Below are positions 44,563 through 52,200 of a DNA stretch of 64,000 bases, one piece after another; positions within the stretch are counted from its first letter, which is position 1, and the number at the start of each line of letters is the position of its first letter. The stretch is from Magallana gigas (lineage: Eukaryota). Both the position numbers and the translations under genes were made by a program. The stretch is from NCBI RefSeq assembly GCF_963853765.1, contig NC_088857.1, positions 42,036,001 to 42,100,000 of the forward strand, read 5' to 3'. The notes under the pieces were generated by a model. It saw only the letters and a list, made by a program, of their open reading frames with translations, did no database searches and had not been told where the DNA came from.

Positions 44563-47500
44563 AAATATTTTTCTACGTGGCACCAACGGGCTTACGTACG
44601 TTTGACTTAGCTTCTATTCTGCATTTTGAGCACAACGCTTTTGTCCATTTATCTTGCCGTTTAATAGTTTCTTGCATGCACAACAACCATCTGTTTACAA
44701 TATGAAATCGTGCAATCTTAAAGAGAATAACATACATTTCATATTTTATAAAAGTAGTAGAAAACGCATATCAAATAATTTCAAGTTATTATTAGCAAAT
44801 TTTTAATTATTAAGAAAAGAAAAGAAAAATACATTTTAACAATGTATATTATTAAGTATAAAAAGAAAATTACATTTTAACAATGTAAACAAAAAGATAA
44901 ACAAAAAAAAAACCGCGTATGATTCGAACACCCGCTTTTTACACTGACATATGTTCAAAGAACTCCTCGCTTACCACTACACCACCGATTCGCTTGTTTA
45001 GAGGGTATAATATAGCTGATTGTATTGTTATCAGTATTATGCAAACAACTGGACTTAGCCATTTCAAAACCAATCTTAAAAATTAAAAGAAGAAAACTTA
45101 CTTTTTACCATAGAGTGGGTTTTCGTACCATTTTTTGGAAAATCGAAAAAGATAGACGTTAATATGTGTTACTAATCAATATTAATATTCGTTCTTTAAA
45201 AAATTGTACGATGACCCACTCTATGAAAAAATATAATTTGAACATCCGATTCCTATATCATTTTGTTGCCAAATTAGCATATAACTACTTTGTTGTCTTA
45301 AAAACAATTAAATGTGAAGTTACTTTTTGTGGGTTATGGCAGCACTGAATGTATATGTTTACATATGTTTAATAAATGTAACAAAAGTGAAATTTGTTAG
45401 AAAAAAAATGTTAGTTTTTTTAATGGGCCTATGTGGTTTTTTGCCTCGGCTTATTCCACCAGATTCTTTGCTTTCAGAGTTATGGTGTACGATTTCAATG
45501 AAACTTAACCTACACGTATAGCTTTATAGCTCGACACCACATAATTGTCAATTGACACTGGATGCAAAATTGTTGTGCAATTTCTACCGTGAGGAAAATC
45601 GGCTAATTGATTTTACTTAGCAAGAAACCAATATTATGTACATTTTAGTGACCCTTGGCCCAATAAGAAAACTACAGAAATGATTCAATGTTTATTTATG
45701 TAATATGATTATGATCAAACAGTTTTCAAGTCTTAAATTAATTAACTATTACATTGTTACAATTCGTCAGTAGCATTACAATTCAAGCACCTCGATACAG
45801 CGTATACTGATTTTTTTTTCAAAACTGCTATGGGATCTCCATACCTATTGCAGGACCGAATGGCCATTCGAGAGATGCTAAGTTCTTCATGTACAGGGAT
45901 TAGAGATCGATTTATTCGGAAAAAATAAGTATTGGGTTTAAGTGGGATATAGAGCTTTCAATTCTTTGTTACGTAAAAAAGGCCCATGCCATGTTTTTGT
46001 TTACATTTAGGTTCTTGAATAGAAAAGTCGCTTTAAAAAATGTAGAAAACCCCAGTTGAAATTCTTAAATTTTTTGCATAGTTCACCAGCATATAGAAAA
46101 AAATATCTGATTTAAACGATTTTACACTATTATACAACGGATGTAAACTTGCAAAACATTACATGAGCTTTATTTACAAAAAAAATAAAAATGCAATGAC
46201 TATATCTCGTTTGTAAATCGACTGCTAACATCCAAATTTCGGTTAAACATTAAAAATATCTTGATAAAGCATTATTAAACAAAAAATTAAGAATTCATCT
46301 AAAGTTCAAATCGTGATGAAATGTGACTAAAAATGTGATTCAGGGTTTTATATAAGAAAATATATTAGGGGTCACAAGAATTACCTCTCGCGTTGCTGCT
46401 AAGGTGAGCAATGTGGCACATGGGCCTCTTCTTTCAATTTTATATCTTTTAGCTAAGAAAATGCTATCCAACCATTTGCATCTTCCTTGTTAGCCCCAGA
46501 AAATCAAGTGTCAGTGATAAATTTAAGTAAAATCCTATTAGAATGGAGTTTAAAAATCTTAAAAATACATTTAAAAAAAAACTACCAATTATTTGTTTTT
46601 ATAATTAAAAAAAATTCTTGTATTATCATGGGAAAAATACGTGCTTAGCCTTACAGTAAATGTCTAAAAAATTAAAATACGAAGGAGAATTATAAAAGTA
46701 GCTAAAATATAACAACCTCGAATCGTTTGCACGCACTTTTTTACACCCGATAACCACACAAGACCAAGAATCGAAAGCAATAAACTGAAAATAACACTAA
46801 GTGTAGTGTATCAATACTTCCAGTTTTTTGTCTTAGTATTTAAATAAAAACACTTCAAATCATACATGCACTTGAAATATACATTTAATCAAAATATGTA
46901 ACAAAAAAAAACCCCACTCACAAGATAAAACGATACCGACTTCCTTGATATTATCGTATTTTTATATTTTTTAAATTGACGTAAACTATAGTTAAATCAA
47001 ACTGTTTCATATCTTATTCTTAACCATTAATGTTAAAAAAATATTCGGATGATAACGGATTTTTTTTAACAAAATGTTGGATATTCAGAGGACATTTAAG
47101 GAAGTCCTATACTCGGCACTAAATGGGCTCAATCATTAAAAACTTAGCTTTAAATGATAATTATACATTCTAGCAATACATATACAAAAGAAAATATGTA
47201 TGTTTACATGCTAGTTTGTTTGTTATCACCTCTCAGACGGGTGTACCCCCTTGCGAAAATCATTTACAATTATGAAATTTGGCAGACGTTCGTTTTTCCT
47301 AAAAATAATTACCAATTTTGGGAAAATTAGAACTGAACATACAAAATAGAGTATAAATATTTATTTAAGCCATATCTCATCAATAATTTTGCGCAAGTTT
47401 TTGTAAGTAAGTACGCTTTATGGACCTGATGTATCAAAAGGGAATACAAAAAATGCAATGCTAGTATCGCGTTTGGTAAATTTTTTTACCATTTTATGGA

Positions 47501-48195
47501 CTCAAACTTAAATTCATGGTGTTTATTCTATAGATTGACATCTTAGAAAAAAGATTTGGTAAAATAAATCATATGTTGACGGATTACTTTTCACGCTATA
47601 AGCTCTAAACCACGAAGACCCTGACGAAAAAATATGTAAAAATCACATTTTGCTACAGTTTTCTGCCTAGATCTGTCAACAATGTCAGATATCATTTAAA
47701 CATTAATTAGTTGACAATTGATTAAATTCGAAATAGCTTCTGTCTCTAAATTTAAACCGGTTTCAGTAAAAGAAAAAGAAAAATTCGGGAGGGGGGGGGG
47801 TCAAAACAAAGAAGATATAAGCATACCTGAGATCCTGGTTAATCAGAAACTTCTTTAACAGAATCGAGTTTCTCAACATTAATCATTTCTATCTCTCATA
47901 GAATACATATATTACCGTTCTAATTGCTTATTATTGCCATTGTTTACAACAGCGATGTAGAGCAAAATCAATACCGGGTATCTAAAAAGCTTTGTAAAAG
48001 TCGAACCAATATTGTAAAATCCGTATTATGACGTAGTGCGATACTCGGACTACTTTAATAAACTCTGCTTCTGATTCAAATACTTGGGTTGACAAATCAA
48101 AACTTTATTTTCTTAAATAATAGTATTAGTAGTATACAACTTCCACTAATAATTTTCTTGACAGAACCGTTCACAGTATTCTTCAGTCATGCAAC

Positions 48196-49200
48196 TATTC
48201 TCTTTTGAGAAGTGGACAGGCATAGCCTACATCCACTTCTCTTCGCAAGCTCTCATGTTTTGATTCTGGAAAATGTGTAAATGTCGGAACCAAAGACGGT
48301 TTACACTTCGAGCCATGTTTCGACTCCAGTTTCACAGAATTTTCGTAAGAGACCTATTATTTCTACATTTTAAACATAAATGCATCCATATATCACAAAC
48401 AAATCACCACTAACCCACTTTCAAACCATTTTCTCAACCTCTACATTCCGGGTTTAAATTATGAGATCACTCGCCTTAGGTGGTGCAAAAAGTAGAAATT
48501 TTAGAGTCGGAAAAAACGGAAAATAGTGTTCCGATTGTAGACTTTAGATTAAAGGTATTTTTCTTAAAATTTACAGAGCTATATAGAACGGTTTTACAAT
48601 TTAAGACAAGTTAACAAAATGCATACGATAAAATAAGTAACTTTGTCACATAAAACAATGAAAACTCTTTATTCTAATCTTTCTTGTATGCTACATTAAT
48701 CAATGTACGTTTTATTCTTAAAAATAGATGTAGAACAAAATTTGTCACCATAAAAGATGGTTAAAAGGGAAGAAATACCACTTTGTAATGATTTGACTCA
48801 TTATTTGTTTGTATGTTGTAAGATTGAATTGATTCAGTTACGTCTTTGACATTATTGTCTTAAATAGGTTTCCAATTTTATCCGAAACATAAACATTTAA
48901 TCTGCGCTGACCTAGATAAACAATGTGATACACAAAATTTAAACCCGGGATGTAGAAGTTGCGAAAATGATTTGAAAGCGGGTTAGTGTTGATTTTTTAT
49001 TGATATATGGATGCATTTATGTTTAAAATGTAGAAATAATAGGTCTCTTACGAAAATTCTGTGAAACTGGAGTCGAAACATGGCTCGAAGTGTAAACCGT
49101 CTTTGGTTCCGACATTTACACGTTTTCCAGAATCAAAACTTGGGAGCTTGCGAAGAGAAGTGGATGTAGGCTATGCCTGTCCACTTCTCAAAATAGAATA
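48196..49200. mobile_element. 1005-bp fold-back / Mutator-like (MULE) non-autonomous DNA transposon
   Basis: Outer TIRs 48196-48395 vs 49001-49200 differ at 4 of 200 positions. Weaker inverted similarity continues to about 48480/48910. Perfect 9-bp TSD TCATGCAAC at 48187-48195 and 49201-49209. Confidence 0.92.
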
Positions 49201-49221
49201 TCATGCAACAGCAACCGGAAT

Positions 49222-52200
49222 TCAAACAGATGTAGGCGTTCCCTGCTTATTTTCCTGCGTGACATTCGGTTTTTGAACAATTTTAACTAATTCATACTCC
49301 AAAGTTACACATTTTGTGTCGTTGTCATTCTCTGATTTCGTTGTCTTTTCACACGGTTTATCCATTTTCCCATTATCATCACCTACTAATGCACCGTCTT
49401 CAATTTTTACCCGATCTTCGATCATTGCTTTATTTTCGCCCGTTGCCTTGTTTTCGCCCGTTGCCTGGTTTTCGCCCGTTGCCTTGTTTTCGCCCGTTGC
49501 CTGGTTTTCCACTGATGCCTTATTTTTGTCCGTTGACTTATCCTCGACCGTTGCCTTGGATTTGACCACTGCCTGGTTTTCGACTGATGGCTGATTTTTT
49601 ACCATTGACTTATTGACTGTTGCCTTGGATTCGACCGATGCATGGTCTTCTTTCGGTGTATTGTTTGTAACCGTTGCCTCACCTTCGATCATTGGCTGGT
49701 TTTCGACCGTTGCCATGTTTTCGACCTTCGTCATATTTTCGACTGTTTTCTTGTCTTCATCTGTTTTGTCGTCTATTGCCGCGGTCTTGTTTTCGACTGT
49801 CGTTTTGTTTACGACCGTTAATATATCTTTGATTGTTGCCTGGTCTTCACTGTTTTTGTTCTTATCTTCTCGATTCTCTTCGGCCCTGACTTGATCGTAT
49901 ACTTTTGAGTCAGCTTTCATTTCTTTGGTTTGATTTTGAGGTTCAGTCTCGTCCCTGGTGTTCACGTTTGAAAGATTTTCAGCCAAGTGTTTCCCACCAC
50001 AATTCTCGTGCTTCTTATTGCATATTATTCTGTTACACGTTTCGGTTGTATCGTAAGTATCGTTATCCAAGTCTTCCACGGAATTTTTAAACTCGGCACA
50101 TGCATATTCGCTTTCGCGATTCTTCATCTTATCATCATCATTTAACAGATCATAATCGCTATCTTCTTCATCAACACTACGCTCTCTGGCTTTGCTTGAT
50201 TTTGTTCCATCGGCGTCCTCATAGTCTGGATCTGTGACGTCATATAAATCACTTGTGCGATCTTCGGGCTCCTCGTCTTCACCGTGTACATTCCTGCTGA
50301 CAGAGCTAAACTCTTTGTCAACCTTTCCCACAGAAAACTTCACCTCGGATATTTTTCTGCCGTTTACTTCACGCATTGATAACGCACGTTCAGCGTCAAA
50401 TTGAGATTTGACTCGAGATCTACAACAGCGGAAGATTTTTATTAAAAAAAAAAAAAGTAAGCAATGCTGGTAACGGATAATCTGATCAATTATTACGATT
50501 TAATATAGAAAATGAATGCCTCAATTGAGCGCTACGTATACAGAGCTGTAAGCACTTCTAACAATTATCTCAATCTTTAACACAATGCGTAATACTTACA
50601 ACTTTCTTCTATACCAACAACACAGACAAGAGCTCCAAATGACAGCAAGGAAGACGGCGGCGCCTGCCACTATAAAGCCCGTTGCTGAAAAATGGAATTA
50701 AAAATGGCATAACAAAATTGGAATCGGCACATGAAATGACATTTGGGTAGAGGGAATGTTAACACGACCTTTTATCTTATTTTTTTTTTATTTATGAGAA
50801 CCATTATAAGTGGTCGTTTTTGGACTACATAAATCTTCTTGAGAAAAAAGAGTTCTGTATAAAAAATAAACGTAGTAAACTAGTCAAATTTTAAAACTTC
50901 TTTTAAAAAGAATCCTTACTTACTTACTTATTCCATAATTGGAATAAATCAGAGTACATATTTAATGGGAAATTGTCGACCTCTTTTACAATACTAGTAG
51001 TTATATGTACACGGGTCTACTTTTTAGTCTTTGTAACAGATCAACCCCTCCACAGATTTAATTTACACTGTGTTTATCAAATGACTTGTTTTTTTAGGAA
51101 ATGCACAAAGTTAGGGAAATGGAGCAGGTCGAGTAATTATGAACCTTTGGAGCGGCTTTTTATTGTAGGTTCTAAAGCATCATATATTTTGTTATGTATT
51201 TATTCGAATACATAACTATACATTCTATAAATAATCGACACTTGTATAATTCGGAAGTAAATGCAAAACTCAGTAAATAAATGATTAAATAAATTAATTA
51301 AATAAATCAAGTCCTACACCAATTAAAAACAATGTAAAATATGTTGGGAACACTCATTTTGAACACATTTTTACCATACATAATGCTGGGGAAATAAATT
51401 TAGACCCTGTTAGAAGCCGGGACGGTTTGAGATCAACCGGACTGCGATCCGTATTTTATTTATCATAGTTGGGTACTAAAACTTACTTAATAATTTAAAC
51501 TAACAAGTGCACTTAAATAAATATTTTAACATGTAAATGAAAAATACTACTAAATGACAAAACCGTCCTGGTTGTAAGATTGATTTGTTGGTCTGTGATT
51601 TTACACTTACTGTTCCACGGACACACCATGGGGACTGCTCTAGAAGTGGTTTCAACAATTATGCTTGTCCTTTCTGTGGTCCGTTTTGTGTTGTCTGTTT
51701 TCAATATTCTGGTTGCGGTACTGCCAACATTTTCTGTTGTATTTCTATCTGTTGTCGTAGTGTTTGGTGACGTCACAGAGGCTGGTAATCAAAGAAAATG
51801 TCATCAAAACAAGTAACGACAATGTTGAAAACTTATTCAAAACTTCCGAAACAAAGCAGTGCATAATTACATTGTACTGTACAGAGGCATTTATAGCGCG
51901 AGTCGATACTTATGTATATACATGTTGATATCCCCTCACGTCTGTTATCTATTAAATGGGGCTTCATACCAGTATTATTATATTCAACCTTAGACTTAAA
52001 TAGTACTCAGTGAAATTAAGGACGTCTTTCCTGTACTACGAGTTACGAAACTATATTTACGGAGTCTTATACAAAGAGTTACTTCATCCATTTTTCTTTT
52101 TTTCGTCGAATGAAATGGTGAATTCTCGCCTATCAATGGGGCGCTTGACTCACAATGCTGCAAACAATACTTACAGTCTCCCACTATATTACTGGTTGTG

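What the first reader, a model, noticed from the sequence alone, without database searches (positions are those of the whole stretch)
48187..49209. Young 1-kb fold-back transposon inserted 21 bp after a receptor's stop codon
Seen: 200-bp arms differing at only 4 positions (weaker pairing extends to ~290 bp) and an exact 9-bp TSD (TCATGCAAC). The element begins 21 nt downstream of the TGA at 49222-49224, and each TIR contains its own palindrome GAGAAGTGGA/TCCACTTCTC. Established: long TIRs with a 9-bp TSD typify Mutator/MULE elements. Inference: the insertion rebuilt the gene's 3' UTR. Either the mRNA ends at an element-supplied AATAAA (minus strand, 48996-49001, present in only one arm, or 48668-48673), or it reads through to the next signal at 48104-48109 and carries a ~200-290-bp dsRNA stem. 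Such a stem could be an ADAR, Dicer or dsRNA-sensor substrate in a putative immune-receptor mRNA.
Basis: partly seen in the sequence, partly recalled or inferred. Interest (0 to 1): 0.7.

Follow-up and report, generated by a model that had tools for sequence, protein, structure and literature searches.

The report
Polymorphic AcademH-type transposon in oyster 3'UTR
A real 1-kb non-coding jumping gene sits 12 bases after the stop codon of an oyster membrane-protein gene and is absent from other oyster haplotypes, but it belongs to the helicase-carrying Academ group rather than Mutator and is an ordinary kind of insertion.

Summary
There is a 1005-bp element (48196-49200) with 268-nt inverted arms, an exact 9-bp target duplication and a subterminal palindrome. 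It lies 12-21 nt after the stop codon of a spliced minus-strand gene.

It is one copy of a non-coding family with at least about 110 copies in this ~564-Mb oyster genome. Copies carry 9- or 10-bp duplications. A 7.8-kb element with the same termini encodes a RecQ-like helicase and a DUF6589 protein, which I show has a DDE-transposase fold. It has no MULE domain. That fits AcademH, not Mutator.

Arm similarity is a family trait, with mirrored substitutions in both arms, so it is not an age clock. Recency is shown another way. RNA contigs from two runs, a 97.5%-identical genomic contig, and contigs of a ~87%-identical oyster all carry the exact empty site. The same haplotypes also lack a second ~960-bp repeat next to the ancestral poly(A) signal.

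The insertion lies inside the transcribed 3'UTR. What happens to mRNA from the filled allele is unresolved. Four poly(A) hexamers precede the second arm, and contig topology hints at partial read-through. "Immune receptor" is unsupported.

Other notes of this scan report AcademH elements elsewhere in this genome.

The parts
48187..48195 (.). Left copy of the 9-bp target site duplication TCATGCAAC
   Evidence: Only one copy of this 9-mer is present in the empty-site contigs.
48196..48463 (+). Left terminal inverted repeat (268 nt)
   Evidence: The terminal 50 nt are 99% conserved across 26 copies.
48207..48241 (+). Subterminal palindrome of the left end (10-bp stem, 15-nt loop)
   Evidence: It is invariant in at least 84 genomic termini.
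48464..48932 (.). Non-coding internal region. It has no similarity to the inside of the 7.8-kb partner, and on the gene strand it carries ATTAAA at 48896-48901 and AATAAA at 48711-48716 and 48668-48673.
48933..49200 (-). Right terminal inverted repeat (268 nt)
48996..49001 (-). AATAAA found only in this copy, created by two adjacent private substitutions at 48999 and 49000 (family consensus TTTTGT on the plus strand)
49155..49189 (-). Subterminal palindrome of the right end
49201..49209 (.). Right copy of the 9-bp target site duplication
49222..50419 (-). Last exon of the host gene (cytoplasmic tail with an 18-bp repeat array, ending TPTSV, stop codon at 49222-49224)
   Evidence: The splice joint at 50419 appears in RNA contigs.
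48054..48186 (-). Rest of the ancestral 3'UTR, with AATAAA at 48104-48109 and ATTAAA at 48054-48059. It is single-copy in the genome.
47100..48053 (.). Second, unrelated high-copy repeat of about 960 bp, flanked by TTAAA and inserted right after the ancestral ATTAAA. It is also absent from the empty haplotypes.

Best explanation
The stretch is one copy of a non-autonomous, non-coding DNA transposon family of the AcademH lineage (Academ superfamily). The 268-nt inverted arms end in a conserved ~50-nt terminus with a 10-bp palindrome. This terminus is presumably what the family's DDE transposase recognises, acting together with a RecQ-like helicase encoded by a full-length element. Integration through a 9-nt (sometimes 10-nt) staggered cut duplicated TCATGCAAC. 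The copy landed 12 nt after the stop codon, inside the roughly 120-190-nt ancestral 3'UTR of an oyster-specific mucin-like single-pass membrane protein gene. The insertion is derived and still absent from other haplotypes. Shown: the element's anatomy, the family, the TSD rule, the coding partner, the empty sites, and transcription through the site in the empty allele. Inferred: trans-mobilisation by the partner; and that mRNA of the filled allele mostly ends at one of four element-borne poly(A) hexamers before the second arm, with a minority reading through to the old signals and then carrying a ~268-bp stem.
For: Family: at least 30 full-length copies at 86-95% identity and 224 termini. TSDs in 26 full-length copies are 16 exact 9-bp and 8 exact 10-bp, and four longer elements each have a perfect 9-bp TSD. 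Partner L031 is 7772 bp. Its terminal 46 nt are identical to the family's, its arms are ~85% like the family's, and its own TIRs are 99.6% identical. It carries DEAD and Helicase_C exons whose best solved relatives are WRN, BLM and RecQ, plus colinear DUF6589 pieces and a PHD finger. The same two genes recur at 41-80% amino-acid identity in a second element. DUF6589 ORFs also lie beside RecQ-like helicase ORFs at two further loci. The DUF6589 model has pLDDT 86.8, and its top structural matches are P-element transposase (Z 10.7), Hermes (Z 9.6), then integrases, RAG1 and Tn5. Literature: AcademH makes 9-10-bp TSDs and encodes a helicase (PMC10045372, PMC10799480), and Academ is expanded in bivalves (PMC10294476). 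Empty site: the joint 48186>49201 skips 1014 nt with 9 shared letters in RNA contigs of X19 and X15. Contig L041 (97.5% identical, introns included) and L042-44 (~87%) hold one copy of the 9-mer and no element. Both flanks are single-copy. The gene is spliced, introns have zero RNA depth, and the X19 contig runs from the coding region through the site to beyond 48054. Four poly(A) hexamers precede the second arm. In X15, contigs break exactly at both TSD/element borders; depths are 21.3 upstream, 10.2 downstream and 3.7 for the empty joint.
Against: I could not compare the DUF6589 protein with reference Academ transposases, because Repbase, Kojima 2020 and Yuan & Wessler 2011 are not held. 'Academ-type transposase' therefore rests on architecture plus the TSD rule. 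Mutator also gives 9-10-bp TSDs and long TIRs. L031 is the only copy of that partner and its arms are only ~85% like the 1-kb family's, so cross-mobilisation is not demonstrated. No read or contig specific to this copy's interior was seen in RNA: at 48251, 48999 and 49000 the RNA contigs show the family consensus letters. Both the internal-termination and read-through statements are therefore inference from hexamers and de Bruijn-graph topology. This copy has 16 private substitutions (1.6%), which is odd for a very recent insertion.
Confidence: 0.8

Rival explanations
1. It is a non-autonomous Mutator-like element (MULE), mobilised by a MuDR-type transposase.
For: It has 9-10-bp TSDs and long TIRs. 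MULEs do occur in bivalves: 39 curated families in PMC10294476.
Against: The one coding element with identical termini and a perfect 9-bp TSD has no MULE or Transposase_mut hit in any ORF piece. Instead it carries a RecQ-like helicase and a DUF6589 DDE protein. That pairing recurs at three other loci and matches the published AcademH description.
Confidence: 0.1
2. In carriers, the mRNA reads through the whole element to the old poly(A) signals and carries a ~268-bp dsRNA stem that is edited or processed (ADAR, Dicer or a sensor), changing the gene's expression.
For: The element folds at -516 kcal/mol against -200 for shuffles. In X15, RNA contigs break at both element borders, and the downstream flank has more depth (10.2) than the empty joint (3.7) while introns have none. 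Repeats, especially DNA transposons, are the main A-to-I targets in metazoans including this oyster genus (PMC9989829).
Against: Four poly(A) hexamers lie between the first and second arm. No RNA contig or read carrying this copy's private letters was seen. The gene is almost silent in the only raw-read poly(A) run laid (X21). No A>G excess could be tied to this copy.
Confidence: 0.3
3. The inverted structure is an assembly artefact or a local inverted duplication rather than a mobile element.
For: None beyond the general risk that long inverted repeats pose for assemblers.
Against: Independent DNA contigs cross both junctions without mismatch. More than 100 dispersed copies share the same ends and have unrelated TSDs. 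Empty sites are precise.
Confidence: 0.01

Closest known systems
AcademH DNA transposons (Academ superfamily; Kojima 2020, as quoted in PMC10045372 and PMC10799480) and their non-autonomous derivatives
   Same: 9- or 10-bp TSDs; TIRs; a full-length relative encoding a DDE transposase plus a DEAD/Helicase_C (RecQ-like) helicase; abundance of Academ in bivalves.
   Different: This copy is a 1-kb non-coding derivative sharing only the ~270-300-nt ends with the coding element. The transposase was matched to Pfam DUF6589 and to a DDE fold, not to curated Academ references.
Mutator-like elements (MULEs) and Pack-MULE-type non-autonomous elements
   Same: Long TIRs and TSDs of 9-10 bp.
   Different: No MULE or MuDR transposase domain in the partner, and a helicase gene is present.
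Drosophila Foldback (FB) elements
   Same: Large inverted arms, a 9-bp TSD and a strong snap-back structure.
   Different: FB arms are built of tandem subrepeats. Here the arms are unique sequence with no internal tandem array and make up only 53% of the element.
Inverted-repeat TEs in 3'UTRs as ADAR substrates (e.g. inverted Alu pairs; repeat-derived editing across Metazoa, PMC9989829)
   Same: A transcribed inverted repeat in a 3'UTR could form long dsRNA.
   Different: Here both arms belong to one element, and formation of the stem in RNA is not shown.

Membership tests
AcademH (Academ superfamily) | Target site duplications of 9 or 10 bp | tested here: met
   Of 26 full-length copies, 16 have exact 9-bp and 8 have exact 10-bp TSDs. 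L031-L034 each have a perfect 9-bp TSD. The rule is quoted in PMC10045372.
AcademH (Academ superfamily) | Autonomous elements encode a superfamily-II (DEAD/Helicase_C) helicase beside the transposase | tested here: met
   L031 has the same termini and carries DEAD and Helicase_C exons, with best solved relatives WRN, BLM and RecQ at E 4e-16. The same gene pair occurs in three other loci.
AcademH (Academ superfamily) | Academ-type DDE transposase (clusters with reference Academ transposases) | tested here: inconclusive
   The partner's second gene matches Pfam DUF6589. A DUF6589 paralogue folds as a DDE/RNase H transposase: Z 10.7 to P-element transposase and 9.6 to Hermes. It has conserved GDN, GGDQLT and D..E motifs. 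No Repbase Academ sequence was available for comparison.
AcademH (Academ superfamily) | Terminal inverted repeats | tested here: met
   268-nt TIRs in the 1-kb copies and in L031.
Mutator / MULE | TSD of 9-11 bp and long TIRs | tested here: met
Mutator / MULE | MuDR/MULE-type transposase (Pfam PF10551 or PF00872) in the autonomous partner | tested here: not met
   No such hit in any ORF piece of L031, even at E up to 0.1-1.
Foldback (FB) elements | Arms composed of tandem subrepeats | tested here: not met
   No direct-repeat family lies inside the arms.
Polymorphic (recent) TE insertion | Precise empty site with a single copy of the target in other haplotypes or species | tested here: met
   The joint 48186>49201 in X19 and X15, and contigs L041 and L042-L044. 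The flanks are single-copy in this genome.

The most novel reading that the evidence does not exclude
The reference haplotype and the empty haplotype form a natural allele pair in which one mRNA gains a 268-bp self-complementary stem. The copy-specific AATAAA, made by two adjacent private substitutions in the first arm, would then be a selected escape that ends the mRNA before the stem can form. That would be a visible case of host or allele adaptation to a dsRNA-forming TE in a 3'UTR.
Probability: 0.08. Interest if true: 0.5.

Novelty: new member of a known kind. Interest (0 to 1): 0.2.

Why it matters
This matters mostly as housekeeping. It corrects the superfamily from Mutator to AcademH. 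It shows that arm identity in long-TIR elements cannot be used like LTR identity to date an insertion. It also documents a gene whose 3'UTR carries two derived TE insertions in one haplotype and none in another.

That allele pair could serve as a simple natural test of what a TE-borne hairpin, or TE-borne poly(A) signals, do to an oyster mRNA. A side result is that Pfam DUF6589 folds as a DDE transposase and travels with a RecQ-like helicase, which gives the domain a likely identity.

Tried and rejected
- Kojima 2020 (AcademH) and Yuan & Wessler 2011 are not held. The TSD rule is therefore cited second-hand from PMC10045372.
- Foldseek against PDB gave no significant match for the DUF6589 model; Hermes appeared only at E~0.15. 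VIA-align wide was needed.
- phmmer of DUF6589 against PDB sequences found nothing.
- The bacterial promoter/terminator scan is irrelevant for a eukaryote and was ignored.
- An exact look-up of the reference last-exon ORF in public contigs found nothing. Homologues had to be used instead.
- The related 8.2-kb element on C6 has 505-nt TIRs but no recognisable TSD. The TIR of L037 runs off the fetched piece. Neither could serve as a second TSD test.
- L032 (5.8 kb, non-coding) and L033 (a LINE nested in a family copy) were rejected as autonomous candidates.
- The raw poly(A) run X21 barely covers the gene, so no 3' ends could be read (table 6: none).
- Many joints inside the element (e.g. 48226>49165) come from short deletion derivatives elsewhere in the genome, not from splicing at this locus.

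Full report
**Observation**

- Arms 48196-48463 and 48933-49200 are 268 nt long and 95% complementary, with 469 nt between them.
- The first 200 nt of the arms differ at four positions, and pairing fades after about 265-275 nt.
- TCATGCAAC flanks the element on both sides.
- The minus-strand ORF of the neighbouring gene ends with TGA at 49222-49224. The element therefore begins 21 nt after the stop codon, and the original target 9-mer began 12 nt after it.
- Each end contains a 10-bp palindrome that folds as single-stranded DNA at -11.1 kcal/mol, z about -4.7.
- The element has no ORF of 70 codons or more of its own.

**Family**

The genome is about 564 Mb in roughly ten chromosome-sized pieces, and public runs that hold the stretch are labelled as oyster.
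- The 1005-bp element has at least 30 full-length relatives at 86-95% identity.
- Its first 46 nt occur 224 times with up to 3 mismatches, against 0 for the reversed control. That corresponds to at least about 110 elements.
- Of 26 full-length copies, 16 have an exact 9-bp TSD and 8 an exact 10-bp TSD, all with unrelated sequences.
- The terminal 50 nt are the most conserved part, with 99% majority frequency.

**Superfamily**

Among terminus pairs spaced more than 1.5 kb apart, one (L031, 7772 bp) has a perfect 9-bp TSD, and its own 268-nt TIRs are 99.6% identical.
- Its ends are about 85% like the 1-kb family's over 270-300 nt, and the terminal 46 nt are identical.
- On one strand it carries exons of a RecQ-like helicase. 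These give DEAD and Helicase_C hits, and the best solved relatives are WRN, BLM and RecQ1/4/5 at E 4e-16.
- Divergently, on the other strand, it carries a gene whose pieces match Pfam DUF6589 in colinear order, with an inserted PHD finger.
- No piece matches a MULE or MuDR domain.
- A second element on another chromosome has the same two genes, exon piece by exon piece, at 41-80% amino-acid identity.
- Two further loci have an intact DUF6589 ORF beside DEAD, Helicase_C or RecQ_Zn_bind ORFs.
- DUF6589 occurs more than 100 times in this genome.

DUF6589 is listed as a domain of unknown function, so I tested it.
- I built an alignment from 29 of its 2145 homologues and modelled a 598-aa paralogue. 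The model has pLDDT 86.8 and pTM 0.86.
- An exhaustive structural comparison put P-element transposase first (Z 10.7, 312 residues aligned). Next came Hermes (Z 9.6), retroviral integrases (Z 8-9), and then ISCth4, RAG1, Tn5, Sleeping Beauty and Mos1. This is a uniform list of DDE/RNase H enzymes.
- Conserved GDN, GGDQLT and D..E motifs fit a catalytic triad, and corresponding motifs are visible in the L031 pieces.

The literature I could read states that AcademH generates 9- or 10-bp TSDs and encodes a helicase, whereas AcademX gives 3-4 bp (PMC10045372; PMC10799480). It also states that Academ is expanded in bivalves, with 100 curated autonomous families against 39 MULE families (PMC10294476). 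The family is therefore best filed as a non-autonomous AcademH derivative. The missing test is a direct comparison with reference Academ transposases, which I could not obtain. Other notes of this scan report AcademH elements elsewhere in this genome. I reached this reading before seeing them and treat them only as agreement.

**Age**

Arm identity is not a clock here.
- Across 26 copies the mean within-copy arm identity is 0.94, and this copy's is 0.95. The arms of different copies are about as similar, at 0.93.
- Several differences from the consensus occur at mirrored positions in both arms: 117/889, 139/867, 141/865, 154/852 and 56/950.
- Two copies have arms 98.5-99.2% identical to each other, though each arm is at most about 95-97% identical to the arms of other copies. 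The arms therefore appear to be homogenised within element lineages.
- This copy is 4.6% from the sample consensus and has 16 private substitutions. By divergence it is mid-aged for the family.

Presence/absence evidence nevertheless shows that the insertion is derived and not fixed.
- Laying reads and contigs gave a joint from 48186 to 49201 that skips 1014 nt, with 9 shared letters. It appears in a 455-nt RNA contig of run X19 (depth 69) and, weakly, in X15 (depth 3.7).
- DNA contigs of X10 cross both filled junctions without mismatch.
- Both flanks are single-copy in this genome, so a paralogue cannot explain the empty form.
- Through homologues of the last exon I recovered a 5.6-kb genomic contig that is 97.5% identical, introns included (L041). 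I also recovered three contigs of an oyster about 87% identical (L042-L044).
- All four run from the coding region straight into the downstream flank with a single copy of the target 9-mer.

**Host gene and 3'UTR**

RNA contigs define minus-strand introns 50420-50599, 50685-51610 and 51782-52174 with GT..AG ends.

The spliced ORF encodes:
- a signal peptide;
- an ectodomain of about 105 aa rich in Ser, Thr and Asn;
- one transmembrane helix (exon 50600-50684);
- an acidic tail of about 400 aa with hexapeptide repeats, ending TPTSV.

It has no Pfam domain, and its only relatives are 'uncharacterized' oyster proteins. Calling it an immune receptor is conjecture.

In the empty haplotypes the 3'UTR has AATAAA about 95-108 nt after the stop and ATTAAA about 144-158 nt after it. 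In L041 the first signal reads GATAAA, and X15 and X19 carry the same T>C change at 48109. The X19 transcript contig runs through the insertion site to about 36 nt past the ATTAAA. The insertion site is therefore inside the transcribed UTR.

The reference haplotype carries a second derived insertion. It is a high-copy repeat of about 960 bp at 47100-48053, flanked by TTAAA, directly after that ATTAAA. It is absent from the same four contigs.

**Consequence for the mRNA (inferred)**

A transcript entering the element from the gene meets, in order:
- AATAAA at 48996-49001, 221 nt after the stop, created by two private substitutions;
- ATTAAA at 48896-48901;
- AATAAA at 48711-48716;
- AATAAA at 48668-48673.

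All four lie before the second arm, which starts at 48463.

If the transcript does read through, the RNA folds into a near-perfect ~268-bp stem, at -516 kcal/mol against -200 for shuffles.

In X15, contigs stop exactly at both TSD/element borders, which is what a mix of filled and empty alleles would produce. Introns have zero depth. Depths are 21.3 just upstream of the element, 10.2 just downstream, and 3.7 for the empty joint. This suggests that many transcripts enter the element and fewer leave it, but it is not proof. No RNA contig carrying this copy's private letters was seen, and the one raw poly(A) run laid hardly expresses the gene.

**Comparison and verdict**

This is an ordinary, well-preserved, polymorphic insertion of a non-autonomous DNA transposon in a 3'UTR. 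Polymorphic TE insertions, including Academ, are reported as common in oysters (bioRxiv 10.64898/2026.02.10.705023). Repeats are the main source of editable dsRNA in metazoans, this oyster genus included (PMC9989829).

The Mutator label and the use of arm identity as an age measure are not. The dsRNA consequence remains an open, testable idea.

**Limits**

Run and organism names are coded, so I cannot say whether X19 ('organism B') or L041 come from the same species or a very close one. Read laying was limited to one call.

Noticed in passing
window 47100-48053: A second, unrelated non-coding repeat of about 960 bp, with more than 690 candidate copies at 92-97% identity. It is flanked by TTAAA on both sides and sits directly after the ancestral ATTAAA poly(A) signal. 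It is absent, with one TTAAA left, from L041 and L042-L044, so the reference haplotype's 3' end carries two derived TE insertions. Its class was not determined.
   Followed up: partly
L031:501-8272 (G000:C1:54951526-54959297): A 7772-bp element with a perfect 9-bp TSD and 99.6%-identical 268-nt TIRs. It has divergent RecQ-like helicase and DUF6589+PHD genes with introns. It is the only copy of this coding element in the assembly and the likely AcademH partner of the 1-kb family.
   Followed up: partly
element positions 56/950, 117/889, 139/867, 141/865, 154/852 (window 48251/49145, 48312/49084, 48334/49062, 48336/49060, 48349/49047): Substitutions relative to the family consensus occur at mirrored positions in both arms. 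Copies L006 and L025 have 98.5-99.2% identical arms, though each arm is at most about 95-97% identical to the arms of other copies. This suggests gene conversion or snap-back repair between the arms.
   Followed up: partly
Pfam DUF6589 (e.g. L037:4059-5852, minus strand): This 'domain of unknown function' models confidently as a DDE/RNase H transposase (P element and Hermes are the best matches). It sits next to RecQ-like helicase genes at four loci and has more than 100 genomic matches. It is probably the Academ transposase core.
   Followed up: yes
window 48109: A T>C variant in the alleles of X15, X19 and L041 turns the gene-strand AATAAA into GATAAA. The ~87%-identical species keeps AATAAA.
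   Followed up: partly
window 49407-49860: An 18-bp tandem array in the last exon encodes ATGENK/ATGENQ-like hexapeptides. Homologous ORFs differ in length (401, 409 and 360 aa), so the array probably varies in copy number.
   Followed up: no
L041:3976-3990, matching window ~49216: The empty haplotype has a 9-nt insertion (CCATTTCCG) in the 3'UTR, 6 nt after the stop codon, relative to the reference.
   Followed up: no
G000:C9:25416408-25416740 and C3:28189620-28189905; joints such as 48226>49165: Very short deletion derivatives of the family, about 70-330 bp and essentially the two termini, exist elsewhere in the genome and are present in RNA and DNA runs.
   Followed up: no
L033 (G000:C1:23491706-23495592): A family copy with a perfect 9-bp TSD is interrupted by a LINE-like insertion carrying endonuclease and reverse-transcriptase ORFs of 590 and 314 aa.
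   Followed up: no
L039+L040 (G000:C6:37118658-37126881): A related 8.2-kb helicase+DUF6589 element has 505-nt TIRs (98.6% identical) but no recognisable TSD at the apparent ends.
   Followed up: partly
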